Positions 8,969-62,985 of a stretch of DNA of 64,000 nt are shown in pieces. Where the stretch lies: positions 1 to 64,000 of the IMG/VR virus record IMGVR_UViG_3300010430_000003, one strand, 5' to 3'. Below the pieces are notes generated by a model that worked only from the letters and a program-made list of their open reading frames with translations, was not told the origin of the DNA and made no database searches. The translations under genes and the position numbers were made by a program. Each line of letters begins with the position of its first letter. The stretch's first letter is position 1.

Positions 8969-10437
8969 TTAAAAGGTATGTAGCCTCAAAAGATGCAACC
9001 ATTACAAATGCATATAAGTATAATAATGATGCTGTTCGTGCTACAGGCAGTAATGTTGGCGGTGCGGATTCTGGCCAAGTCTTTTCTCTATTCGGAAATA
9101 TCTCAACAGGTTCCATTGAAAAATCAAGGATGATTATTCAGTTTCCAGTCAATAATATTGATGCGGATAGAAGTCTAGGACTCGTGCCTGCTTCCGGGTC
9201 AGTCTCATTCTATCTTAAAATGTATAATGTTAAGCATACTGAAACACTTCCAAGAAATTTTATATTAAATGTTTCACCAATTTCATCTAGTGTGGATTGG
9301 GAAGAGGGAGAAGGTTTAGATCTTGACGACTATACTGATTGGGGTCGAGGTTTCGGTGGACAAGGAGTCACATGGTCAACATATGCAAGCTCTACTCTCG
9401 GAGCCTTATCATGGTCAGTTGGCGGAGGAGACTTTTATAATGATCTTCTTTTCTCACAGAGCTTTGAAGAGGGTTACGAAGATTTAAGTATCGATATTTC
9501 TCCTTTAGTAGAAGAATGGATTGACGGGACAAAAGATAATCGTGGTGTTTTGTTATATTTAACCTCTTCACAGGAAAATCATTCTTCATCCATTTCTTAT
9601 TACACAAAACGTTTTTCAATGCGCAAGAGTGAATTTTTCTATTCACGACCTGTCATTGAAGCAGTGTGGGATGATTCCAAGAAAGACAACCGTGGAAATT
9701 TCTATCCGAGTTCATCTTTCCTTCCAGCAGATGATAACTTAAATACAATTTATTTTTATAATTTTGTAAGGGGACAACTTACCAATGTGGCTGGCCTGAC
9801 AGATGATTTAATGTATGTGCGAGTTTTTGAATCATCATCAAATGGTTCTGAAATTACAACAACACCGTCTTCACCTATTACTGGCGGCCTTACATCAGAA
9901 GTTGGAATTTATTCAGCTTCACTTGCAGTTGCAACAAGCGGAACAATGTCAGTTATGTTTGACCGGTGGTATGTTGATACAACAGGCTCCGCGACAAATT
10001 GTGTTCATACTGGAACTATTATTATTGAAGATTGGGCCGCAAACAACACAGCAACAAGAAAAGAGTATGAATTAAAAATCTCCAATCTTAAGAATGAATA
10101 TTCTACTCGTGAACAAGATACTAGGCTAAGACTTTTTACTAGAGAAAAGTGTTGGAATCCATCTATTTATTTGGTAGCTGTAAATGAAACTCCTTTATCG
10201 ATTGTCGATGATATTTATTACAGGGTTATTAGAAGTGCAGATGACAAAGAAGTCGTTGGGTTTGGAACTGGTTCATTAAATGAAACAAGAGTCTCTTATG
10301 ATGTGTCAGGCTCTTATTTTGATTTTGATATGGGAATATTAGAACCTGATTTTGGTTATGAATTTAGATTTGCTATTTATGAAAATGGTAATTACGTAGA
10401 GCATCCATATATTGCAAAGTTTAGAATAGAGGATTAA
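8965..10437 (+). CDS. Putative virion structural protein (beta-rich)
   Basis: Ser/Thr/Gly-rich 490 aa, ATGA-coupled to the gp6-like gene. Confidence 0.55.
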   Translation: MIKRYVASKDATITNAYKYNNDAVRATGSNVGGADSGQVFSLFGNISTGSIEKSRMIIQFPVNNIDADRSLGLVPASGSVSFYLKMYNVKHTETLPRNFILNVSPISSSVDWEEGEGLDLDDYTDWGRGFGGQGVTWSTYASSTLGALSWSVGGGDFYNDLLFSQSFEEGYEDLSIDISPLVEEWIDGTKDNRGVLLYLTSSQENHSSSISYYTKRFSMRKSEFFYSRPVIEAVWDDSKKDNRGNFYPSSSFLPADDNLNTIYFYNFVRGQLTNVAGLTDDLMYVRVFESSSNGSEITTTPSSPITGGLTSEVGIYSASLAVATSGTMSVMFDRWYVDTTGSATNCVHTGTIIIEDWAANNTATRKEYELKISNLKNEYSTREQDTRLRLFTREKCWNPSIYLVAVNETPLSIVDDIYYRVIRSADDKEVVGFGTGSLNETRVSYDVSGSYFDFDMGILEPDFGYEFRFAIYENGNYVEHPYIAKFRIED

Positions 10438-10439
10438 GA

Positions 10440-11582
10440 ATGTCGAAAGAGCTAGAAATGGAAAACCTTCTCAAAAGAGTTGCTGATAAATTTAAGAAAA
10501 AGAAACCACAAGCAAAAGATCCTTCGCAATATAAAGGATATTTTGATAAAAAGAAGAATTCTACAATTACGACTAATACTGCTGATAATCCTTTTGACAT
10601 GGAAGAAAGTGAAGAAAATCTTGATGAGAAATCCTTGGAAGAAGAAGGAGATGGGGGCGGAGGTGAAGGTGCTTCTACTGGGCAAGGTGGTGGTGGCTCT
10701 TATGGCTCTGAAGCAAGTGTTACTTATGACGGAGATGATGCCACATTCTGGGCTGGAAAACAAACTGGTAAACGCAAGAAAATGAAAACTGGGGGTCTTA
10801 CTTCTATGGGCGGTAATAAATATCTTGGTGAAATTATTGATAACTTTGAAGAGCAACAAGTTTCAAATTTTTTTGAAGAACTTGGCTATGGTGAGCTTTT
10901 TGAGCAAGTAAGGGGAGAAGTCTTGCAAGAAAAACAAAAACAGCAAGAATTTAATATTCTTTTGGAAAATTTATTTGAAGCTAACAAAAGACAAAAGGTA
11001 CCCGTTGGATGGCACATAGAAAGAATTAATAGATTAGTTAATGAGTTGCAAGAAAGATTTACAATAATTTTGCAAGGGAACGAAGATATAGATTTCTTTC
11101 AACCTATTATAGAAGAGCATTTGCAACAATTAGTTTATATTGCAAGTAGGATTGAACAAGATGATACAGGAAAATGGTTGGAAGAAGATTGGAAAGCAGA
11201 GCCAATCTCTGGTGCAGCTGATGAAGGTCCAACATGGGAAAAGAATTTAGCTGGTATGACAAAAATGTTAGATAATATGGTTACTGCTCTTAAATCTCTT
11301 GAAAAAGATAAGCCCGGTGCATCGGGCATTGATATTCAAGTATTTGGTGCTTTAAATAAAGCAAGAAATGCAATTCGACAAGGAGATATTGGAGTTGGAA
11401 TTCAAGCCCTCGCCGCAGTATTGAAATCAAACGTCCCGAAAAAAGTTATGAACATGTTATATCCAGTGTATGCAAATCTTCAAGATCTTCAGGGCGAAGT
11501 TGATGTCAGTAAGGTTAGCAGGGCAACAGATGTTTCTGGTGATGAAGATGAGGAAGTTACAGTCCCCGGTGGAATGGAATAA
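10440..11582 (+). CDS. Acidic, Gly-rich low-complexity hypothetical protein
   Basis: 380 aa with a GGGGEGASTGQGGGG tract and Glu-rich blocks. Confidence 0.6.
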   Translation: MSKELEMENLLKRVADKFKKKKPQAKDPSQYKGYFDKKKNSTITTNTADNPFDMEESEENLDEKSLEEEGDGGGGEGASTGQGGGGSYGSEASVTYDGDDATFWAGKQTGKRKKMKTGGLTSMGGNKYLGEIIDNFEEQQVSNFFEELGYGELFEQVRGEVLQEKQKQQEFNILLENLFEANKRQKVPVGWHIERINRLVNELQERFTIILQGNEDIDFFQPIIEEHLQQLVYIASRIEQDDTGKWLEEDWKAEPISGAADEGPTWEKNLAGMTKMLDNMVTALKSLEKDKPGASGIDIQVFGALNKARNAIRQGDIGVGIQALAAVLKSNVPKKVMNMLYPVYANLQDLQGEVDVSKVSRATDVSGDEDEEVTVPGGME

Positions 11583-42396: not shown

Positions 42397-42485
42397 TGAG
42401 TCATGATTGGCAAGAGTATTATAAAGAAAAGTATGAAAAGGTTCTTGAACAATTAGAGCCACACTTTTTTAAGAGGAATAAATGA
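42396..42485 (+). CDS. 29-aa micro-ORF MSHDWQEYYKEKYEKVLEQLEPHFFKRNK
   Basis: Read manually; TAATG overlap with the upstream stop and ATGA overlap with the downstream start; GGAGG upstream. Confidence 0.55.
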   Translation: MSHDWQEYYKEKYEKVLEQLEPHFFKRNK

Positions 42486-45400
42486 AAATTGCTCACCTCG
42501 CCGACATTCATATTAGAAATTTGAAGTATCATGAAAATTACAAAAAAGTTTTTAATAAATTATATTCTTCTCTTAAAGAAAACGAGCCTGATGTAATAAT
42601 AGTTGCTGGGGATATAGCACATACAAAAATCTCCATCTCTCCAGAATATATTGACATCTCTTCTGATTTTTTGCGTAGTTTATCGTCACTACAAAAGACG
42701 ATAGTGATTCCGGGGAATCATGATATGGTCTTATCCAATCTCAACAGGCAAGATTCCATTTCACCAATTGTTAAAAATATTAATAATGATAATTTAATTT
42801 TTTTGAAAAAATCAATTAATTATCAAGTTGGAAATATTAATTTTGGCAATATATCAATTTGTGATGATATAATTCTAAAACCCAAGGAAGGTTATATTAA
42901 CATTGCTCTATATCATGGAGCTATCAAGGGTGCTAAAACAGATACCGGCTGGATTATTGAAAAGGGCGATCATGACGTTGAGATCTTTGATGGTTTTGAT
43001 TTTGCGATGCTTGGTGATATTCACAAATCAAACCAAGTCATGGATACAGAAGGCAGGGTAAGATACTGCGGGTCACTCATCCAGCAAAATTTTGGTGAAG
43101 ATCAAGAGAAAGGATATCTCATGTGGGATATTCAAGACACAGATAACTTTGAGTGTGAATTCATTCCATTGGAAAATGAATGCCCATTTGTTACTACTGA
43201 GTATGGAAACATGGGCACTATCCCTTCTAACTCAATGCTCCGAATCGTATTAACTGAGGCTCTCACTAAGAAGGAAGTAGATGATTATCTGATGTATGTG
43301 TCTGATACCTTTACTCCAAAGCTATTAACAACGATAACTGAGAAGAACTTTACAAAAACTGGAAACAATCTCAAAATCAATAATGATGATATTTTGCTTG
43401 ACGCAGTTCAAGAAAAGTTTTTAACAAATTATGTTGAGAGGGAGATTGAAGACGAAAGAATAAAAGGTAGAGTGTTGGAACTTGCCAACAACTACAAGCA
43501 AGATGTTAAAGATACTTCTTCAATTAATTGGACAATCGAAACAGCAGAATGGAGTAACCTTTTTTCTTATAAGGACAATAACAAAATATCCTTTGCAGAT
43601 AAACAAGGGATAACAGGGATTTTCGGTGCGAACTATTCAGGCAAATCATCTGTGGTAGAAATAATTCTGCTTGGCCTGTTTAATTCAACATCCAAATCAA
43701 TTCCGAAAAGTGTTGATTATATTAATGAAGACGAAAACTATGCAGAGGTTACTGTAACCTTAGTATCTGGTGAGGATGAAATTGAAATTGTCCGTTCCTT
43801 TACAAGAAAGAAGAATTCCGCAGCTACTACTGTTGATTTCTATATCAATGAAGAAAAGTTCAATGGTCAGTCAAGAACTGAGACTGATAAAATCATTCAG
43901 GCTTATTTGGGCTCTAAAGATGATTTCATGAATACGACAATTGCCACGCAGTTCGGCTCTCTCCAGTTTGTTGAATCCAAACCAACAGCTAGGAGGGAGA
44001 CAATCTCTCGGTTTTTTGGATTGGATGTATTTAGTGAAAAGCATAAAAGAGTGTCAGATGACTATTTGGAGAGCAAAGGAATTGTTGATCTCTTAAAGAA
44101 GAAGATTGACAGTGGTATTTCCATTTCTGATATTGAAGAAGAAATTGACAGGAAAAAGAAGTATTTGGAGGCTCACATTTCAACCAAGAACGTAAAAGAA
44201 CAGAGTCAATCTGAATATGCTGTGAGAGCCTCTGAGCTTGAATCTAAGCTAAAGAAGGTTCCCGCTGATATAGGAGATGTCTCTAGTCTGGAACAGAAGG
44301 TGAGGCAATATGAGAGCGCTGAAGGGCTAACTAAAAAAGAACTTGCTTCACTTCAAGAACGTGAGACTAATGTTGATGAAAAAATATCAAGAGTTAAGAA
44401 GGAACTTTTAAACATAGATTATGAAGCATTGCTAAGTAAGCGTGAAGTGTTGGATGGTTTTAAAAGTAAGAAGGAGACTGCCTTATCTATTAAAAGAGAC
44501 TTTGAGTTGCAAAGAGGTAAAATTGAGAGGGCAAAAGAAACTATAGCTAGCCCACCATGTCACAAGAACAATCTTAATTGCTGCAAGGTAAAAGAAGCTC
44601 AAAAGTTCTTAGATAGTCAAGATAAGCTTATAGAGAATGTCGAAAAGTCTCAAAAATTAATTGAAGCTGTTAATTCTAAAATTAGCCAATTTAATGAACA
44701 GGAGTTAAGGCTTCAAATTCAAGAAAAAGAAGACAAAGATAATCTTCTAAGAGAGTTAGAGACTTTGAAGATCAGTGTAGCTAACAAAATTAATAGCGCG
44801 CAGTTTAAAATAGACAAGATACTCTTTGAAAAGAAGAAGAGTAATGAAGCTCTTGAGAAGAGCAGAGAGAATACTAGTCTCTTTGAAGAAAAAGAGCAAA
44901 TGGAGAGTAAACTTGCAAGCTTAAAAAAGATATCTTCTAACATTGAAGGTGAAATTAAGAGCATTGATTGTGAAATAGCAAACTTAAATAAGTTTATTGG
45001 TGCCCAAGAAGAGAAAATTAAGACCGTCAATGACATGAGAGAAGAATACAACGACAAATTGTTTGATTTTGAAGCTTTGGAGTATTTAAGGAAAGCTTAC
45101 CACAATAAAGGAATTCCATTATTAATTATCAAGGACAAAATTCATATTTTGAACTCGAAAATTGATGAATTGCTTAGTGGAATTGTGGATTTTTCAATAT
45201 ACATCGAAGAGAATGAAAATATTGAAATTATGATTCATCACCCAAGACAAAAACCAAGAAAAATCAACTTGGGGTCTGGTGCTGAAAAGATCTTTGCTTC
45301 AATTGTTATCCGAATTGCCCTTATGAGTGTTACAAGTCTTTCTAAAGCAGAACTGTTCATTCTAGATGAACCAGCTACTGGCTTGGACGAGGAACATATG

Positions 45401-45541
45401 AGTGCTTTTATGAAGATTTTGGATGTTGTGAAGTATAATTATGAAAATGTGATTTTGATCACTCACTTGGGCATGTTAAAGGATAAAGTAGATTATGCTT
45501 TTGATGTTCAAAAGAGTGAAAACGTGTCGAGGATATTATGA
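42482..45541 (+). CDS. Fused SbcD/Mre11 (gp47-like) nuclease and SbcC/Rad50 (gp46-like) ATPase
   Basis: LADIH, AGD, PGNHD, LGDIH phosphoesterase motifs; Walker A GANYSGKSS; coiled coil; signature LGSGAEK; Walker B ILDEP; H-loop LITH. Confidence 0.92.
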   Translation: MKIAHLADIHIRNLKYHENYKKVFNKLYSSLKENEPDVIIVAGDIAHTKISISPEYIDISSDFLRSLSSLQKTIVIPGNHDMVLSNLNRQDSISPIVKNINNDNLIFLKKSINYQVGNINFGNISICDDIILKPKEGYINIALYHGAIKGAKTDTGWIIEKGDHDVEIFDGFDFAMLGDIHKSNQVMDTEGRVRYCGSLIQQNFGEDQEKGYLMWDIQDTDNFECEFIPLENECPFVTTEYGNMGTIPSNSMLRIVLTEALTKKEVDDYLMYVSDTFTPKLLTTITEKNFTKTGNNLKINNDDILLDAVQEKFLTNYVEREIEDERIKGRVLELANNYKQDVKDTSSINWTIETAEWSNLFSYKDNNKISFADKQGITGIFGANYSGKSSVVEIILLGLFNSTSKSIPKSVDYINEDENYAEVTVTLVSGEDEIEIVRSFTRKKNSAATTVDFYINEEKFNGQSRTETDKIIQAYLGSKDDFMNTTIATQFGSLQFVESKPTARRETISRFFGLDVFSEKHKRVSDDYLESKGIVDLLKKKIDSGISISDIEEEIDRKKKYLEAHISTKNVKEQSQSEYAVRASELESKLKKVPADIGDVSSLEQKVRQYESAEGLTKKELASLQERETNVDEKISRVKKELLNIDYEALLSKREVLDGFKSKKETALSIKRDFELQRGKIERAKETIASPPCHKNNLNCCKVKEAQKFLDSQDKLIENVEKSQKLIEAVNSKISQFNEQELRLQIQEKEDKDNLLRELETLKISVANKINSAQFKIDKILFEKKKSNEALEKSRENTSLFEEKEQMESKLASLKKISSNIEGEIKSIDCEIANLNKFIGAQEEKIKTVNDMREEYNDKLFDFEALEYLRKAYHNKGIPLLIIKDKIHILNSKIDELLSGIVDFSIYIEENENIEIMIHHPRQKPRKINLGSGAEKIFASIVIRIALMSVTSLSKAELFILDEPATGLDEEHMSAFMKILDVVKYNYENVILITHLGMLKDKVDYAFDVQKSENVSRIL

Positions 45542-46604: not shown

Positions 46605-46950
46605 AGAAAGACCTTGGGGTAAGTTTGAAATAATTTATGAAAGTGATCAAATTAAGGTTAAAAAGATTACTGTAAATCCATATTCACGCTTATCATTGCA
46701 ATCTCACAACCACAGAGAAGAAGAGTGGACTGTTGTTGAAGGCGTATTGGGAGTTTCATATGGTGAGCACGTTGATGATATATTTGAAGTATATGTGCAT
46801 GTTGCTGGGTCGAAGCACATCCCACAAGGGGTGATTCATAGAGCTTTTAATGACACGTCTAAGAAAGCTGTTTTCATCGAAATCCAGAAAGGTACTTATT
46901 TTGGAGAAGATGATATCTTAAGATATGAGGATGATTATGGGCGAGATTAA
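46591..46950 (+). CDS. Cupin, mannose-6-phosphate isomerase type II C-terminal-like
   Basis: ERPWG, LSLQSH.HREEEW, HR..N, IEIQ.GTY.GEDDI.R.EDDYGR. Confidence 0.85.
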   Translation: MNYIEERPWGKFEIIYESDQIKVKKITVNPYSRLSLQSHNHREEEWTVVEGVLGVSYGEHVDDIFEVYVHVAGSKHIPQGVIHRAFNDTSKKAVFIEIQKGTYFGEDDILRYEDDYGRD

Positions 46951-47764
46951 AAGAGCGTTAGTTTTATCTGGTGGTGGTTCTAAGGGAGCATATCAAGTTG
47001 GTGTGCTTAAAGCACTTGCAGAAATGGGTCATAAATATGATGGTTATTATGGTGTATCTGTTGGTGCTCTTAATGCTGCATACCTCGGAATGTATTATGA
47101 TTTTGCAGATGGTGTAAAAGATTTAGAACAGAAATGGCTAAGTCTTGAAACTAAACGAATTTATAAGAAGTGGTTTGCGTGGCCTTTATCTATTCCATTT
47201 AAACCAAGTATTTATAACAGCACACCTCTTGAAAAGTGGGTGGGAGAAGAGATAAAAGAAGAAAAGTATATTAGACCTGTATCGGTTGGCTGGACTTCTC
47301 TTGCTACTGGTGAATATAGATCTATGAATAATGAGCACCCTGCTTTTAAGAAGTCTGTTATTGCCTCTGCTTCTTTTCCGGGGTTTTTTAAACCCGTTGA
47401 GTTTAGGAATGAATGGTTAATTGATGGTGGTGTCCGAAATGTCACACCACTTAAAGAAGCAATTGATTCTGGTGCTACGGAAATTGATTGTGTAGTTTTA
47501 GATGCCGCAGGTATTGAGTATTCTAATAAAAAACCCAAAACCCTTAATGTGTTATCACGCACAATCAATATCATGTTAGATGAAATTGTGGAGAACGATA
47601 TCAAAATGTGTCAGCTTTATAACAAGCACAATCTTGGTAGAAAGATCAAGTTAACAGTGTATAGACCTTCAAGCCCACTTGGTGTTAACTCACTTGATTT
47701 TAATTCTGAACAAAATAAAAAGTTGATGAAGTGGGGATATCAAGAAACATTTGAGTTAGTCTAA
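46925..47764 (+). CDS. Patatin-like phospholipase (likely start 46937)
   Basis: LVLSGGGSKG oxyanion loop, GVSVG nucleophile elbow, IDGG catalytic Asp. Confidence 0.92.
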   Translation: MRMIMGEIKRALVLSGGGSKGAYQVGVLKALAEMGHKYDGYYGVSVGALNAAYLGMYYDFADGVKDLEQKWLSLETKRIYKKWFAWPLSIPFKPSIYNSTPLEKWVGEEIKEEKYIRPVSVGWTSLATGEYRSMNNEHPAFKKSVIASASFPGFFKPVEFRNEWLIDGGVRNVTPLKEAIDSGATEIDCVVLDAAGIEYSNKKPKTLNVLSRTINIMLDEIVENDIKMCQLYNKHNLGRKIKLTVYRPSSPLGVNSLDFNSEQNKKLMKWGYQETFELV

Positions 47765-56895: not shown

Positions 56896-57150
56896 ATGAA
56901 GAGAAAAAGAGCAAGACGCAATACAAAGTTCATGGAATATTTTGATAACTGTAATGTAGAAGTGTTTGTAGACGACTACGATAGTTTAGATAAGGCCATT
57001 AGAAAGTTTACTAAGAAAGTTAAGGAAGATGGTGTATTAGAACAATGTTGGGAAGCTAAAGTATATGAGAAACCTTCTGATAAAAAGCGAAGAAAGAGGA
57101 AGGAAGCAAAATATAATAGAAAAAAGAATCTCACTAAGAATAAGTATTAA
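56896..57150 (+). CDS. rpsU: Ribosomal protein bS21 (phage-encoded)
   Basis: VEVFVDDYDSLDKAIRKFTKKV..GVL...YEKPSDKKRRKRK matches the bS21 pattern. Confidence 0.88.
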   Translation: MKRKRARRNTKFMEYFDNCNVEVFVDDYDSLDKAIRKFTKKVKEDGVLEQCWEAKVYEKPSDKKRRKRKEAKYNRKKNLTKNKY

Positions 57151-58913: not shown

Positions 58914-60614
58914 ATGTCTGGTAAAATCGTTGAAAAGTTAACCGGTGACATTCAATCCTACGATGTAGTGAAAGAAGGTCAACTTTTGGTTAATAAATGG
59001 ACGCGAGCCGGTCTTCTTGAAGGCATCTCTGATGACGTAAAAAGAACCAATATGGCTCGTTTGCTTGAGAACCAAGCAAAACAAATTCTAAAAGAGGCTT
59101 CCACTATGGCAGCCGGTGACGTCGAAGGTTACGCTTCTGTAGCGTTCCCCCTCGTTCGTCGAGTATTCGGTAATCTTCTGGCTAATGACCTTGTGTCAGT
59201 TCAGCCAATGAATCTTCCTGCGGGACTGATTTTCTTCTTGGATTTCCAATACAATTCATCTCGCCTTGGGAGCGTTGCTGAAGATTCAGTATTCGGTCAA
59301 GGCATTGTCGGTCGCGAGTTGACTGGTGGTGTTGATCTTTCAAATGCTGAGCAGGATAAAGGCCCGTATAACCTGAATAACGGTTATTCAAGCCCGACTG
59401 CTTCATTTACTGTCACAACCACACTGCTCGCTTCTGGTACAGTAGGCGCATCAACAAATTCAGGCTCTAATGCTGATGTTGATAAGCTTGTTAAATATGA
59501 TCCTGACTTGTCGGGTTCAACTGTTGCGATTGCAACTGTTCCACTTTCAGAGCTTACCACTGGTGGCAATGAATTTAATGAGAGTGACCTTGTCGCTCTT
59601 AACTTCACTAACCTTTCAAGCTCTGGTGCAGCTTATCGACAAATTCGTCGACTTACAAGCTACTCTGGTTCGAAGACAGACGGAACTCTGTTATTTGTGA
59701 TTGAAGTGGCGTCAGGCTCACATACTGAGGTCCTTGCAGGTGCTGCTATTGATGCGGTAACTACACTTGATGCTCCGCTTGCTGATAACTTCGATGGCGG
59801 CGGCGCTCTCGGTTCTGTTGTTGGTGCTGATGTTTGGGGCCTTGAGGCTGACGAAGGTATTCCTGAGTTGGATATCAAAGTTGATTCCATCGCTCTGACA
59901 GCTATCACCAAAAAGCTGAAAGCTAAATGGTCTCCTGAGCTTGGTCAAGACCTCAATGCTTATCATAATGTCGATGCGGAAGTTGAGCTTACCTCAATTC
60001 TTGCTGAGCACATTGAGCTTGAGATTGATCGAGAGATCTTGGAAGATCTTACTAAGCTTGCTACAGGCTCGACAAAGTTCTGGTCACGACTTCCGGGTAA
60101 GTTTGTGAACGAGGACACTGGTGCGGATATTTCTAATACTACTGCACCGCCTGACTTCACCGGTAACGTATCCGAGTGGTACGAAACACTTATCGAGAAA
60201 GTCAATGGCGTCTCGGCTGTTATTCAGCGTAAGATTCTGTCTGGTGGAGCTAACTTCCTTGTTTGCTCACCTGAAGTTGCCAATATCCTTGAGTTTACTA
60301 ACGGATTCCGTGGAAACGTTTCAGTGGGCGAAGAGCGTGGTACTGCCGGTGCGGTTAAAACTGGTCAGATCAACAAGAAGTTCGACGTATATGTCGATCC
60401 TTACTACTACCGAAATGGTCTTCTGGTAGGACGAAAGGGCTCCTCTTTCCTTGAAAGCGGATTTGTATATGCTCCTTATGTCCCTCTGCAGATGACACCA
60501 ACCATCTTCGGTACTGAGGACTTCGTGCCTCGTAAGGGCGTCATGACACGCTATGCGAAGAAGATGGTTCGTCCTGACTTCTATGGCACGGTCATTGTCC
60601 TAGACCTTGTATAA
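58914..60614 (+). CDS. gp23: Major capsid protein (T4 gp23-like)
   Basis: LLENQ, PLVRRVF..L.A..LVSVQPM..P.GLIF, KLKAKWSPELGQDL.A.H..DAE.EL..IL, ESGFVYAPYVPL, KGVMTRY. Confidence 0.97.
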   Translation: MSGKIVEKLTGDIQSYDVVKEGQLLVNKWTRAGLLEGISDDVKRTNMARLLENQAKQILKEASTMAAGDVEGYASVAFPLVRRVFGNLLANDLVSVQPMNLPAGLIFFLDFQYNSSRLGSVAEDSVFGQGIVGRELTGGVDLSNAEQDKGPYNLNNGYSSPTASFTVTTTLLASGTVGASTNSGSNADVDKLVKYDPDLSGSTVAIATVPLSELTTGGNEFNESDLVALNFTNLSSSGAAYRQIRRLTSYSGSKTDGTLLFVIEVASGSHTEVLAGAAIDAVTTLDAPLADNFDGGGALGSVVGADVWGLEADEGIPELDIKVDSIALTAITKKLKAKWSPELGQDLNAYHNVDAEVELTSILAEHIELEIDREILEDLTKLATGSTKFWSRLPGKFVNEDTGADISNTTAPPDFTGNVSEWYETLIEKVNGVSAVIQRKILSGGANFLVCSPEVANILEFTNGFRGNVSVGEERGTAGAVKTGQINKKFDVYVDPYYYRNGLLVGRKGSSFLESGFVYAPYVPLQMTPTIFGTEDFVPRKGVMTRYAKKMVRPDFYGTVIVLDLV

Positions 60615-60635
60615 TCTAACCTAGTTTGGATTATG

Positions 60636-60663
60636 AAACCTCCCAGAAATGGGAGGTTTTTTT
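60636..60663 (+). terminator. Intrinsic terminator after the major capsid gene
   Basis: AAACCTCCCA-GAAA-TGGGAGGTTT followed by a T-run. Confidence 0.92.
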
Positions 60664-60675
60664 ATTATATCATTA

Positions 60676-60703
60676 TTGATTTGCTGTTCTGTGTTAATAT
60701 AAT
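60676..60703 (+). promoter_or_regulatory. Sigma70-like promoter for the accessory island
   Basis: TTGATT (60676-81), 16 nt spacer, TATAAT (60698-703); AAGG upstream of ATG 60721. Confidence 0.55.
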
Positions 60704-60720: not shown

Positions 60721-60942
60721 ATGAATAAAGACAACATTAATTTGATGATGAGTTCCGTATATGTCCATGAAATTTTGTGGGGAGCAACTATGGATACGGG
60801 CTTCGCATGTTATTTCTCCTTGGGGCGTAGAAGGTCATCCTCATATTGGATGAGATGCAACTATGGTTTTATAGCAAAAGTGAAAGGGGAAAACCAATTC
60901 ATACAAGGTTATTATCCCTCTTGCAGCATCACTCTTGTATGA
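60721..60942 (+). CDS. Hypothetical protein
   Basis: 73-aa ORF after the promoter and SD. Confidence 0.5.
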   Translation: MNKDNINLMMSSVYVHEILWGATMDTGFACYFSLGRRRSSSYWMRCNYGFIAKVKGENQFIQGYYPSCSITLV

Positions 60943-60951
60943 AAGAATAAT

Positions 60952-61278
60952 ATGAAAAATGGTTTTCTAAAGAAAATTTTTGAAAGTGGATATGTCTATG
61001 CACCCTATATACCGATGCAAGTAACGCGAAATTTCAACCAGTCCCCGAAATATAAAACAGAGGTTGTGGCGGAGAATATTAATAAAATCATTGCAATGCA
61101 TTGGGTTTTGGATACAGTGCAATTTCATATGGTTCATCGGGTTGGTAACCCACACCTCCGCAAACGAACTGTGGATTTTGACGTGTCGAACATGTATGGA
61201 TTTCAAATGAGATATTATGATCAATATTGCCCTCTCAGAATAAGAGTAGCTTTAAACTGGTTAAGACAATATGAATGA
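60952..61278 (+). CDS. Small protein carrying a copy of the major capsid ESGxVYAPYxPxQxT motif
   Basis: Residues 11-25 ESGYVYAPYIPMQVT versus capsid ESGFVYAPYVPLQMT (60453-60497). Confidence 0.75.
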   Translation: MKNGFLKKIFESGYVYAPYIPMQVTRNFNQSPKYKTEVVAENINKIIAMHWVLDTVQFHMVHRVGNPHLRKRTVDFDVSNMYGFQMRYYDQYCPLRIRVALNWLRQYE

Positions 61279-61558
61279 AGTAATGGCTCATAAAGCCCGC
61301 GCCACTGGCTCACGTTCCAATCGCCATCGCCGACGCAGGAGAGGTCGTCGCAGCCACCACCGTATTTCCATGGAGCCTAAAGATATTAATTTGTATGTTG
61401 CTCGGCATTGTCTGGTTCCACGAGTCACTTTTATTGAAGCATTTCTATTTTTTAGAAAATCATCTTATTCTTGTAATAATCTTTACCGGGCACACGGCCC
61501 CGCTAATATACAGGATGTGAAGATGTGGTTAAATGTTCGCGCTGAGAGCCAGTTATAA
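61271..61558 (+). CDS. Arginine-rich small protein
   Basis: RSNRHRRRRRGRRSHHR tract. Confidence 0.5.
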   Translation: MNEVMAHKARATGSRSNRHRRRRRGRRSHHRISMEPKDINLYVARHCLVPRVTFIEAFLFFRKSSYSCNNLYRAHGPANIQDVKMWLNVRAESQL

Positions 61559-61560
61559 AA

Positions 61561-62217
61561 ATGAATGTGTTGTTATCATATCCAAGATCCGGCAATACGT
61601 GGACTCGTTATTGTGTTGAATTTCTGACAAAGAAGCCAACGCAAGGAGTTATGGGTTCTTCCGCAACAATTAAGACGCCTATGGGATTGCATAATTCTGA
61701 TATGGAAGTGGATTTTGAGCAAGAAACAATCTTGAATAAATTTCACCATCCACCGGAGTGTGTTGGAATTCGACCCCTCCCAGAAAAGCTGATATTGCTG
61801 GTTAGAAATCCTCTAGAAAGCATCACAAGACATGATCCCGCAAGCATTCCAGCCTTCACTATCCCATCAATACGACACTATATAAGCTTGTTGTATTATT
61901 ATGATTTGTTTGAAAATGAAAAAATGATTGTGTTTTATGAGGACTTAATTAAAGACGAAACACTCCCCCACACTTTAAATGAAATTCTTGATTTCCTTGG
62001 TGAACCTAAAGATAATCTAATTCCTTTTATGGAGGGGATTGAATACCATCGTTCGGAAGGGGTGAGGATTTACAATACAAACGGAAACCGTTCTCAAACT
62101 GAAGGTAACGAAGAGAACTATCATAGAAAGAAAATCAAAATTGAAAGATCGTTAGAAAAACTTCTTGAATGGGATCAGGGTGGATATTTCCACAAATACT
62201 GTCATAGATATTTATGA
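61561..62217 (+). CDS. Sulfotransferase domain protein
   Basis: LSYPRSGNTW (5'-PSB loop), KFHH, LLVRNP (3'-PB), VFYEDL. Confidence 0.85.
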   Translation: MNVLLSYPRSGNTWTRYCVEFLTKKPTQGVMGSSATIKTPMGLHNSDMEVDFEQETILNKFHHPPECVGIRPLPEKLILLVRNPLESITRHDPASIPAFTIPSIRHYISLLYYYDLFENEKMIVFYEDLIKDETLPHTLNEILDFLGEPKDNLIPFMEGIEYHRSEGVRIYNTNGNRSQTEGNEENYHRKKIKIERSLEKLLEWDQGGYFHKYCHRYL

Positions 62218-62423
62218 ATTTATTGATTGCGCAATGTTATGTTAACTCTTGGATTGCATCATCTTTCGCGTGGCACACACCCGATCCGATGGTTTTTACT
62301 CCAAAACAAAGAAAGACAGTGATGGGTTGGGGATATTTTCCCTTAAGAGCATATAAAGATATAAAACTCTCCATTAATATAATTTTGGAAAATATAAAAT
62401 TCAATGACTTCTTTAAATGTTGA
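62214..62423 (+). CDS. Hypothetical protein
   Basis: 69-aa ORF, ATGA-coupled to the previous gene. Confidence 0.45.
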   Translation: MNLLIAQCYVNSWIASSFAWHTPDPMVFTPKQRKTVMGWGYFPLRAYKDIKLSINIILENIKFNDFFKC

Positions 62424-62985
62424 TATGAAAAAAGATATTAAACTAATTGTTATTTGTGGGCCTTCTGGTGTAGGGAAGACGTCAATTGCATCGTTTTTGG
62501 TAAAGAGGATTTGGAATTCCTGTTTTTGTGTTTCTCATACAACTCGGAAATCTAGAATTACTGAAATGGATGGAATTGATTATTATTTTGTGTCTGAAGA
62601 TAAGTTTGAACAAATGAAAAGCAATAATGAGTTTGCAGAACATGCCCATGTATATGGCCAACAATATGGAACATCATGGGATGTTGTTGAAGAAGACCTT
62701 GAAGATGAAATCAAGATTCTTGATGTTGATTATAACGGCGCTGAAGCGATCTACAGTAGATATCCAGACAACACCATTGTCTTTTCTATATTACCACCTT
62801 CAATCAAAGAACTCCAAACAAGGCTGAGGCTTCGTGGTACCGATTCTTTAGTTACAATACAGCAACGATTGTTGAGAATTGAAGAAGAGCTTGAATATGA
62901 ATTGCAAGTTCCTCATGTGGAAATTATCAATTCAGATATGAGAGAAACCCAGAAAATGGTTATGAAATGTCTTCAACCTCAATAA
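62404..62985 (+). CDS. gmk: Guanylate kinase (likely start 62425)
   Basis: GPSGVGKT, VSHTTR.SR..E.DG.DYYFVS, YGT, LRLRGTDS. Confidence 0.95.
   Translation: MTSLNVDMKKDIKLIVICGPSGVGKTSIASFLVKRIWNSCFCVSHTTRKSRITEMDGIDYYFVSEDKFEQMKSNNEFAEHAHVYGQQYGTSWDVVEEDLEDEIKILDVDYNGAEAIYSRYPDNTIVFSILPPSIKELQTRLRLRGTDSLVTIQQRLLRIEEELEYELQVPHVEIINSDMRETQKMVMKCLQPQ

What the first reader, a model, noticed from the sequence alone, without database searches (positions are those of the whole stretch)
60952..61278. Capsid-motif mimic: a 108-aa protein displaying a conserved major-capsid segment
Seen: residues 11-25 (60982-61026) ESGYVYAPYIPMQVT match the capsid's ESGFVYAPYVPLQMT (60453-60497) at 11 of 15 positions, and the other four are conservative. 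Seven of the 11 identical codons differ at the third base (AGC/AGT, GTA/GTC, GCT/GCA, CCT/CCC, CCT/CCG, CAG/CAA, ACA/ACG), so the peptide rather than the DNA appears to be preserved. The rest of the protein is unlike the capsid. Known: YAPY is a hallmark gp23-family motif, and capsid proteins trigger host defences (CapRel; Lit via the T4 Gol peptide). Inference: an early-made decoy that pre-occupies a capsid-sensing immune receptor or chaperone, or a strand-swapping modulator of capsid assembly or a competitor's capsid. I know of no described system of this kind.
Basis: partly seen in the sequence, partly recalled or inferred. Interest (0 to 1): 0.85.

Follow-up and report, generated by a model that had tools for sequence, protein, structure and literature searches.

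The report
Small phage protein carrying copied capsid strand
A rare 108-residue protein of an uncultured T4-like phage begins with a roughly 30-residue copy of a conserved beta-strand of its own major capsid protein; the copy is preserved at the protein level in related phages, so it probably acts on capsid folding or assembly, but this is untested.

Summary
ORF 60952-61278 carries ESGYVYAPYIPMQVT, which matches the neighbouring gp23-type capsid protein at 11 of 15 residues. That is far beyond chance (best of 3000 shuffles: 9 identities), and the DNA differs mostly at third codon positions.

It is a real gene, not a relic:
- Two orthologs sit at the same place, just after the capsid-gene terminator, in related phages.
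- One keeps 16 of 16 motif residues through 8 synonymous codon changes, while the rest of the protein is 38% identical.
- Across the orthologs the capsid-derived piece spans about 34 residues, equivalent to capsid residues ~499-533.
- In T4 gp23 this is the P-domain strand that holds the gp31-bypass site A455, followed by the P loop that holds capsid-length mutations.

The remaining ~80 residues are a helical "domain X" found in only seven proteins among 5.8 billion clusters. One has no capsid piece. Three are tandem paralogs with arginine-rich N-termini.

The genes lie in an accessory island inserted between the capsid and neck genes.

My best guess for mechanism, inferred and not shown, is strand mimicry acting on capsid-protein folding or assembly. 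An immune decoy remains possible.

Separately, I found a large unannotated family of free-standing ~85-residue copies of the capsid C-terminus.

The parts
58914..60614 (+). Major capsid protein gene (gp23 family, 566 aa), the source of the copied segment
   Evidence: Pfam Gp23 E 2e-67. Matches T4 gp23 structures 5vf3 and 6uzc at E about 1e-29.
60408..60512 (+). Capsid residues ~499-533: loop, P-domain beta-strand (motif at 60453-60497) and P loop. This is the segment that reappears in the small protein family.
   Evidence: Alignments. By alignment to T4 gp23 (offset 65) this is gp23 ~435-463. It contains A455 (gp31-bypass site, P-domain beta-sheet) and T457/R460/G461 (length mutations at the P loop), per PMC9546572.
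60635..60660 (+). Intrinsic-terminator-like hairpin plus T-run ending the capsid transcript
   Evidence: The same hairpin is present in L081 and L088.
60676..60703 (+). Sigma-70-like promoter (TTGATT, 16 nt, TATAAT), the best match in the 5.5 kb scanned
   Evidence: 10 of 12 positions. An equivalent -35, 16-nt spacer and TATAAT are conserved after the terminator in L088 and L081. This is a consensus match only.
60721..60942 (+). ORF73, first gene of the island; possible third paralog of domain X with no N-terminal extension
   Evidence: Ortholog in L088 at 9793-10008 (37% identity). hhalign against domain X gives E 2e-4, probability 47%, starting at the shared NINL block. Weak.
60952..61278 (+). 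ORF108 (P0001), the finding. Residues 1-26 (60952-61029) are capsid-derived; residues 26-108 (61027-61275) are domain X.
   Evidence: AF2 is low-confidence (pLDDT 52-55): N-terminus without regular structure, helices at ~40-60 and ~84-106.
61271..61558 (+). ORF95 (P0122), tandem paralog: arginine-rich N-terminus plus domain X. Its start overlaps the ORF108 stop by 8 nt.
   Evidence: The domain-X profile hits the equivalent neighbour in L088 at E 1.6e-6. Alignment. Recovered as a family member (E 5e-17).

Best explanation
ORF108 is a genuine, selectively maintained accessory gene of a ~210-kb T4-like phage. It is a chimera. About 35 codons copied from the 3' part of the phage's own capsid gene (loop, P-domain beta-strand, start of the P loop) are fused in frame to a small helical domain (domain X). 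Domain X also exists without that piece and as tandem paralogs with other N-termini. The gene sits in an accessory island inserted at the capsid/neck-gene junction and is probably transcribed from its own promoter. Those points are shown or nearly shown. The mechanism is inferred: domain X presents the capsid strand as a free, flexible N-terminal peptide. That peptide would occupy the site where the native strand normally docks, either the partner strands of the capsid protein's P-domain sheet or the quasi-threefold contact. It would thereby chaperone, time or modulate capsid-protein folding and assembly, in the manner of donor-strand complementation. The C-terminal strand of a 566-residue protein is the last part to be made, so a surrogate strand acting in trans is a plausible aid.
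For: Real gene under selection: orthologs P0002 (L081) and P0003 (L088) sit at the same position after the capsid terminator. Overall pN is 0.36 against pS 0.73. In the 16-residue block ESGYVYAPYIPMQVTR (motif plus the following R), 16 of 16 residues are identical with 8 synonymous codon changes, against 38% identity elsewhere; over the 15-residue motif alone one search counts 15 of 15 with 7. Against P0003 the motif is 9 of 15 identical with only conservative changes, and the rest is 39% identical.
Capsid origin: the union of the three orthologs matches 17 of 19 positions of the lineage's own capsid segment, and all three share one derived L-to-M change. A two-sequence profile hits capsid proteins at about 1e-7.
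Modular build: P0004 begins exactly where the capsid piece ends and has an in-frame stop upstream. Paralogs carry arginine-rich heads.
Role of the strand in T4: A455V in this strand removes the need for the gp31 co-chaperonin, and T457A, R460C and G461S just after it alter capsid length at quasi-threefold contacts (PMC9546572; numbering).
Other: AF2 leaves the N-terminal peptide unstructured beside two helices. The island lies at a hotspot: in most related loci gp13 follows the capsid gene within ~200 nt, against 2.9 kb here.
Against: No binding, expression or phenotype data exist. The AF2 models are low-confidence (pLDDT 52-55), so 'flexible displayed peptide' is weak. The family is tiny (three motif-bearing proteins), so the conservation statistics rest on three genomes. 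58 related loci with at least 2.5 kb of sequence downstream of a capsid gene that is 56-63% identical carry no such gene, so it is dispensable for assembly of this capsid type. P0004 works, whatever it does, without the piece. The motif is not the only conserved block (ENINKII.MH and NP.LRK are as conserved). A separate sigma-70-like promoter would not obviously match late capsid synthesis.
Confidence: 0.4

Rival explanations
1. Immune decoy. The displayed capsid peptide binds a host sensor that recognises this most conserved part of gp23-type capsid proteins. It occupies the sensor without activating it, before capsid protein accumulates.
For: The motif is the most conserved stretch of the capsid family, so it would be a good pattern for a sensor and hard for the phage to mutate. 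A sigma-70-like promoter suggests expression independent of the late capsid transcript. The gene lies in a fast-evolving accessory island with tandem diversified paralogs, as is typical of counter-defence loci. Capsid-sensing defences exist: CapRel (PMC13728456) and Avs7 and Dsr1 (bioRxiv 10.64898/2026.01.04.697583).
Against: No known sensor targets this strand. The Lit trigger (Gol) is gp23 residues 93-122 (from established knowledge), not ~446-460. In a folded capsid protein this strand is buried in the P-domain sheet, so it is a poor surface epitope. A free peptide could just as well trigger a sensor as block it. A November 2026 review of phage counter-defences and my searches mention no capsid-fragment decoy.
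Confidence: 0.15
2. Co-opted leftover with no mimicry. The capsid piece arrived by accident when the island was inserted at the 3' end of the capsid gene. It is now kept simply as a hydrophobic N-terminal element that packs on domain X or mediates self-association, and its function is unrelated to capsids.
For: The gene lies exactly at the capsid-gene junction of an insertion hotspot, which is where a partial duplication would arise. P0004 and the paralogs show that domain X works with other N-termini or none. Other blocks of the protein are equally conserved.
Against: The capsid piece has stayed capsid-like (all substitutions fall within the capsid family's own repertoire) through saturating synonymous divergence. 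AF2 does not pack it on the helices, though at low confidence.
Confidence: 0.2
3. Chaperonin-directed or competitor-directed action. The strand is the element that makes gp23 depend on GroEL and gp31. The small protein would use it to engage the chaperonin. Alternatively, it poisons the capsid assembly of co-infecting related phages as a dominant-negative fragment.
For: T4 A455V lies inside this strand and bypasses gp31 (PMC9546572). The motif is near-identical across many gp23-type capsids, so a fragment could act on relatives.
Against: No co-chaperonin gene was seen in the 64-kb window, and I made no targeted search for one. A dominant-negative fragment would also threaten the phage's own capsid, which carries the same strand. 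There is no direct evidence.
Confidence: 0.15
4. Untranslated relic of a second capsid gene, or the alternative 3' exon of a split capsid gene.
For: Adjacency to the capsid gene and in-frame similarity to its 3' part.
Against: The capsid gene is complete, and a terminator and a promoter-like site separate it from the ORF. No further capsid similarity exists in any frame downstream. The ORF is intact in three divergent genomes with dN well below dS. The two DNA copies are only 32 of 45 bases identical.
Confidence: 0.03

Closest known systems
gp23-family major capsid proteins (Pfam PF07068; T4 gp23 and gp24)
   Same: Residues ~2-26 (up to 34 in orthologs) are homologous to the loop, P-domain strand and P loop at profile positions 313-333. 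They include the YAPY hallmark.
   Different: Only ~6% of the capsid protein is present, with no HK97 fold. The score is below Pfam's gathering threshold (12.2 against 24.4 bits). The remaining 80 residues are unrelated helices.
Free-standing 'mini gp23 C-terminus' proteins found here (alignment A3; P0006-P0120, all annotated 'hypothetical')
   Same: These are small phage proteins that begin with the same GYVYAPYIP strand. hhalign against the ORF108 family gives E 2.5e-14. They are stand-alone ORFs in myovirus-like contexts.
   Different: The minis keep the whole capsid C-terminus (residues 503-562, E 9e-14) plus a 22-residue basic insert, and they lie far from the capsid gene. With the motif masked, ORF108 shows no significant similarity to them (E 0.12). 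ORF108's motif is best explained by descent from its own lineage's capsid gene.
Donor-strand complementation chaperones (the PapD/FimC class of chaperone-usher pili). This is a functional analogy from established knowledge.
   Same: The concept is the same: a separate protein supplies a beta-strand to an incomplete sheet of a structural subunit until the proper strand replaces it.
   Different: There is no sequence or fold relationship. The analogy is untested here.
DSAD1, which blocks DSR2 sensing of the tail tube protein (PMC11087589, listed)
   Same: A phage protein that interferes with sensing of a phage structural protein by a defence protein.
   Different: As far as I know DSAD1 is not a sequence copy of the structural protein. 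No sensor is known for the motif studied here.
T4 Gol peptide (Lit trigger) and T4 capsid-targeting sequences of internal proteins
   Same: Both are short capsid-related peptides with a biological role of their own.
   Different: Gol is gp23 residues 93-122, not this strand. A capsid-targeting sequence ends in a (L/I)xE cleavage site; that fits P0001 (IFE) but not P0002 (WCE) or P0003 (YLD).

Membership tests
Gp23 major capsid protein (PF07068) | Match to the profile above the gathering score (24.4 bits) across the HK97-fold core | tested here: not met
   12.2 bits, E 0.11, profile positions 313-333 only.
Gp23 major capsid protein (PF07068) | Homology of the motif segment to the capsid P-domain strand | tested here: met
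   Profile of P0001 and P0002 against capsid ORFs gives E ~1e-7. Shuffle test. P0003 is 18 of 34 identical to the capsid segment.
Mini gp23 C-terminus family (A3) | Presence of the capsid C-terminal block (SRYSKK..YYG) and the basic insert after the motif | tested here: not met
   The hhalign alignment stops at column ~50. The motif-masked comparison gives E 0.12 over 8 columns.
Domain X family (A5; defined here) | Conserved blocks ENIN(K/L)xI(A)MH, NPx(L/I)R(K) and P..I...L.WL in a ~80-residue helical region | tested here: met
   Alignments. Only 7 proteins were recovered among 5.8 billion clusters, and 4 clusters among 1.84 billion representatives.
T4 Gol / Lit-trigger peptide | Corresponds to gp23 residues 93-122 | tested here: not met
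   The motif aligns to mature gp23 positions 380-391, which are full-length residues 445-456.
T4-type capsid-targeting sequence | N-terminal ~10 residues ending in (L/I)xE, cleaved by the prohead protease | tested here: inconclusive
   P0001 has I-F-E before SGY, but P0002 has W-C-E and P0003 has Y-L-D. A prohead protease gene is present. Cleavage is not testable here.
Anti-defence decoy of a capsid sensor | Binds and blocks a host sensor of the capsid protein | not testable with these tools
   The host and its defence systems are unknown, and no complex prediction is available.

The most novel reading that the evidence does not exclude
ORF108, and independently the much larger mini gp23 C-terminus family, would be trans-acting mimics of the capsid protein's P-domain strand and P loop. 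They would dock on gp23-type capsid proteins, either the phage's own or a competitor's, or on a chaperonin or immune sensor that reads this strand. That would make them a previously undescribed class of capsid-directed regulators or decoys built from pieces of the capsid gene itself.
Probability: 0.3. Interest if true: 0.85.

Novelty: new variant of a known kind. Interest (0 to 1): 0.6.

Why it matters
If the copied strand really acts on the capsid protein or on something that reads it, phages would be shown to recycle fragments of their own structural genes as regulators or decoys. This would point to the P-domain strand and P loop as a control point; in T4 that region governs chaperonin dependence and head length. 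A whole unannotated family of free-standing capsid C-terminus mini-proteins in many uncultured phages suggests the phenomenon is general rather than a curiosity of one genome. If instead the piece is only a co-opted leftover, the locus still documents how new small genes arise by partial duplication at an insertion hotspot next to a core gene.

Tried and rejected
- Relic or extra homology in other frames: tblastn of the capsid protein against all other window sequence found only the in-frame segment.
- Second motif copies in relatives: none in 80 IMG/VR loci with a capsid gene 56-63% identical.
- Polymorphism-based selection test: the other seven contigs carrying P0001 have DNA identical to the window over the ORF and almost everywhere else (one mismatch outside the ORF in L087), so they are uninformative.
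- Membership in the mini family: rejected after masking the motif.
- Structure: two AF2 runs (4 and 7 sequences) gave pLDDT 55 and 52. I ran no fold search because matches to such models are meaningless. A PDB sequence search with the profile found nothing.
- Family libraries: Pfam, PHROGs and NCBIfam gave no real hit. The only matches were sub-threshold hits to Gp23 and to a 43-residue PHROG of unknown function that covers the motif.
- A capsid-like counterpart for the arginine-rich head of ORF95: no match in the window.
The scan for domain X returned only the window's own contig.
- Cultured phages: tblastn with ORF108 or with a mini hits only annotated capsid genes.
- Literature: five searches (one was rejected for a too-short term) and three papers read found no description of capsid-fragment small proteins.
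- Late-promoter motif hunt (TATAAATA) was uninformative.

Full report
**1. The observation**

The window carries a complete gp23-family major capsid gene at 58914-60614 (566 aa; Pfam Gp23 E 2e-67; T4 gp23 structures at E ~1e-29). 338 nt downstream of its stop codon lies a 108-codon ORF at 60952-61278.

- Residues 11-25 of the ORF (ESGYVYAPYIPMQVT) match capsid residues 514-528 (ESGFVYAPYVPLQMT) at 11 of 15 positions. The four differences are conservative.
- The coding DNA is 32 of 45 bases identical, with 12, 14 and 6 of 15 matches at codon positions 1, 2 and 3. Seven of the eleven identical residues use different codons.
- In 3000 shuffles of the small protein the best 15-mer never exceeded 9 identities or a BLOSUM62 score of 44 (mean 24.3, sd 3.6). 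The observed values are 11 identities and a score of 70.
- tblastn of the capsid protein against the rest of the window gives E 0.001 for this segment and nothing else.
- That alignment also pairs KNGFL (residues 2-6) with capsid RNGLL (500-504) across a 5-residue gap.

**2. It is a real, conserved gene**

A word-indexed search of 5.8 billion protein clusters found one homolog, P0002. An exhaustive HMMER pass over 1.84 billion representatives added P0003 and P0004, plus P0005, which is just a capsid C-terminal fragment.

P0002 (L081) and P0003 (L088) sit at the same place as ORF108, just after the capsid-gene terminator and upstream of a guanylate kinase gene and the gp13 neck gene. The capsid proteins of these phages are nearly identical to the window's: 205 of 210 residues for L081 and 539 of 565 for L088. 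Guanylate kinase is about 70% identical. The small protein is only 33-39% identical outside the motif.

- Window against L081: the block ESGYVYAPYIPMQVTR is 16 of 16 identical although 8 of its codons differ synonymously, including an AGT/TCA serine switch. For the whole gene pN is 0.36 and pS is 0.73.
- Window against L088: 9 of 15 motif residues are identical, and all six changes are conservative and lie within the capsid family's own repertoire.

The other contigs carrying P0001 are essentially identical in DNA, so they are the same phage seen in several samples. The longest is a 210,326-bp contig, and the window is its first 64 kb.

**3. Extent and origin of the capsid piece**

- P0002's N-terminus aligns without gaps to about 32 residues of related capsid proteins.
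- P0003's first 34 residues are 18 of 34 identical to capsid residues ~503-536, running on into the TPTIF stretch that follows the motif.
- Taken together, the three orthologs match the lineage's own capsid segment at 17 of 19 motif positions. They share one derived change, L to M.

I infer that the piece descends from this lineage's capsid gene by a partial duplication of about 35 codons (capsid residues ~499-533; 60408-60512).

The location fits that origin. 58 related IMG/VR loci have at least 2.5 kb of sequence downstream of the capsid gene. In about 40 of them the gp13 match begins roughly 180-235 nt after the capsid gene, and the other 18 carry inserts that put it about 0.46-2.3 kb away. 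In the window the gap is 2.9 kb. The capsid/neck junction is therefore an insertion hotspot, and ORF108 is the first or second gene of the island.

**4. The rest of the protein**

P0004 comes from a 1.2-kb AT-rich contig. It starts exactly where the capsid piece ends (MTRP...), with an in-frame stop just upstream, so it lacks the motif.

The shared C-terminal ~80 residues ("domain X", with blocks ENINKII.MH, NP.LRK and P..I...L.WL) also occur in the gene immediately downstream:

| Genome | Paralog position | Evidence |
|---|---|---|
| Window | ORF95, 61271-61558 (overlaps the ORF108 stop by 8 nt) | |
| L088 | 10323-10667 | profile E 1.6e-6, |
| L089 | 826-1125 | weak alone (profile E 0.36); E 8.6e-14 with the 7-sequence profile, |

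In these paralogs domain X follows a different N-terminus: strongly arginine-rich in the window and L088, only mildly basic in L089. ORF73 (60721-60942) may be a third paralog with no N-terminal extension (hhalign E 2e-4, probability 47%).

A final search with a domain-X alignment recovered only these seven proteins. Domain X has no match in Pfam, PHROGs, NCBIfam or PDB sequences.

AF2 is low-confidence (pLDDT 55 and 52). In both runs it gives two long helices (~40-60 and ~84-106) and an N-terminal peptide without regular structure.

The architecture is modular: a variable N-terminal "head" on a small helical body.

**5. What the copied strand does in a capsid**

Alignment to T4 gp23 shows that the mature chain numbering is offset by 65 from the full-length numbering. 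The motif therefore falls on gp23 residues ~446-456, and the residues that follow fall on 457-463.

According to PMC9546572:

- T457A, R460C and G461S alter head length. They sit where three P loops meet at the quasi-threefold axes, which are the anchor points between capsomers.

The small protein therefore carries the strand and loop that, in the model phage, govern capsid-protein folding and capsomer-to-capsomer geometry. This mapping rests on homology. It has not been tested for this phage.

**6. Transcription context**

An intrinsic-terminator-like hairpin (60635-60660) ends the capsid gene. The best sigma-70-like match in the region follows it: TTGATT, 16 nt, TATAAT at 60676-60703. Both elements are conserved in L088 and L081. 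In those two genomes the -10 hexamer lies only 6 nt from the first ATG, which suggests a leaderless transcript. These are consensus matches, not evidence of timing.

**7. Mechanism**

- Shown: a chimeric, conserved gene whose capsid-derived peptide is under purifying selection.
- Inferred, best guess (confidence ~0.4): the peptide acts by mimicry at the site where the native strand docks, modulating or chaperoning capsid-protein folding and assembly.
- Rivals: an immune decoy (0.15), a co-opted leftover with no mimicry (0.2), chaperonin- or competitor-directed action (0.15), and a non-coding relic or split gene (0.03, effectively excluded).
- Against any essential assembly role: most relatives with this capsid type lack the gene.
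- Against a decoy of a known sensor: the motif is not the Gol region, and it is buried in the folded protein.

**8. A related, larger phenomenon**

The alignment search also surfaced more than 100 clusters of ~85-residue proteins (A3).

- They reproduce the whole capsid C-terminus (residues 503-562; hhalign E 9e-14) with a 22-residue basic insert.
- They are stand-alone ORFs with an in-frame stop just upstream. They lie far from any capsid gene, in phage contexts of 29% and 53% GC. One lies next to an SbcD-like gene with a tail-tube-like gene about 1.7 kb away.
- All are annotated as hypothetical.
- They were not found in cultured phages at the sensitivity used.

ORF108 shares only the motif with them, so I do not file it as a member. 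They do show that free-standing capsid-C-terminus peptides are recurrent in phages.

**9. Novelty and verdict**

No curated family or paper I could search describes a small phage protein built on a capsid fragment. I rate it a new variant of a known kind: gene birth by partial duplication and domain fusion, possibly molecular mimicry. There is a 0.3 chance that it represents a new class of capsid-directed mimic. Interest is 0.6.

Noticed in passing
L090 6001-6267, L094 6001-6267; proteins P0006-P0120 (alignment A3): A large unannotated family of free-standing ~85-residue phage proteins. They equal the last ~60 residues of gp23-type capsid proteins plus a 22-residue basic insert, and GYVYAPYIP is invariant. 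They lie far from capsid genes, in genomes of 29% and 53% GC.
   Followed up: partly
window 61271-61558: ORF95 is a tandem paralog of ORF108 whose N-terminus is an arginine-rich tract (about 16 Arg in 30 residues) in place of the capsid piece. It may bind nucleic acid. No counterpart of this head was found elsewhere in the window.
   Followed up: partly
window 56896-57150: A ribosomal protein S21 homolog (Pfam E 4e-13) is encoded inside the head-morphogenesis module, between the prohead protease and the scaffold-like gene. It is also present in L088.
   Followed up: no
window 42482-45541: A single 1019-residue ORF combines a Metallophos (SbcD/gp47-like) domain and an SMC_N/AAA_23 (SbcC/gp46-like) domain. 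This looks like a fusion of the two T4 recombination-nuclease subunits.
   Followed up: no
window 46925-47764: A patatin-like phospholipase gene (Pfam E 2e-34) lies in the structural region.
   Followed up: no
window 61561-62217 and 62404-62985: The accessory island also carries a weak sulfotransferase-like ORF (Pfam E 6e-5) and a guanylate kinase (E 5e-36). The kinase is the conserved island gene in L081 and L088.
   Followed up: no
L081 ~690-733; L088 ~9755-9795: In the two related phages the conserved TATAAT lies only 6 nt before the first ATG of the island. This suggests a leaderless mRNA.
   Followed up: no
window 35634, 55788, 57182: The octamer TATTTATA lies 37-46 nt upstream of three gene starts, including the prohead protease and the scaffold-like gene. 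It could be a phage promoter element. The other eight occurrences lie inside genes.
   Followed up: no
window 1-64000: Every ORF of at least 130 residues that looks like a gene is on the + strand. This is one long co-oriented structural block: baseplate and tail genes, terminase, portal, protease, capsid.
   Followed up: no
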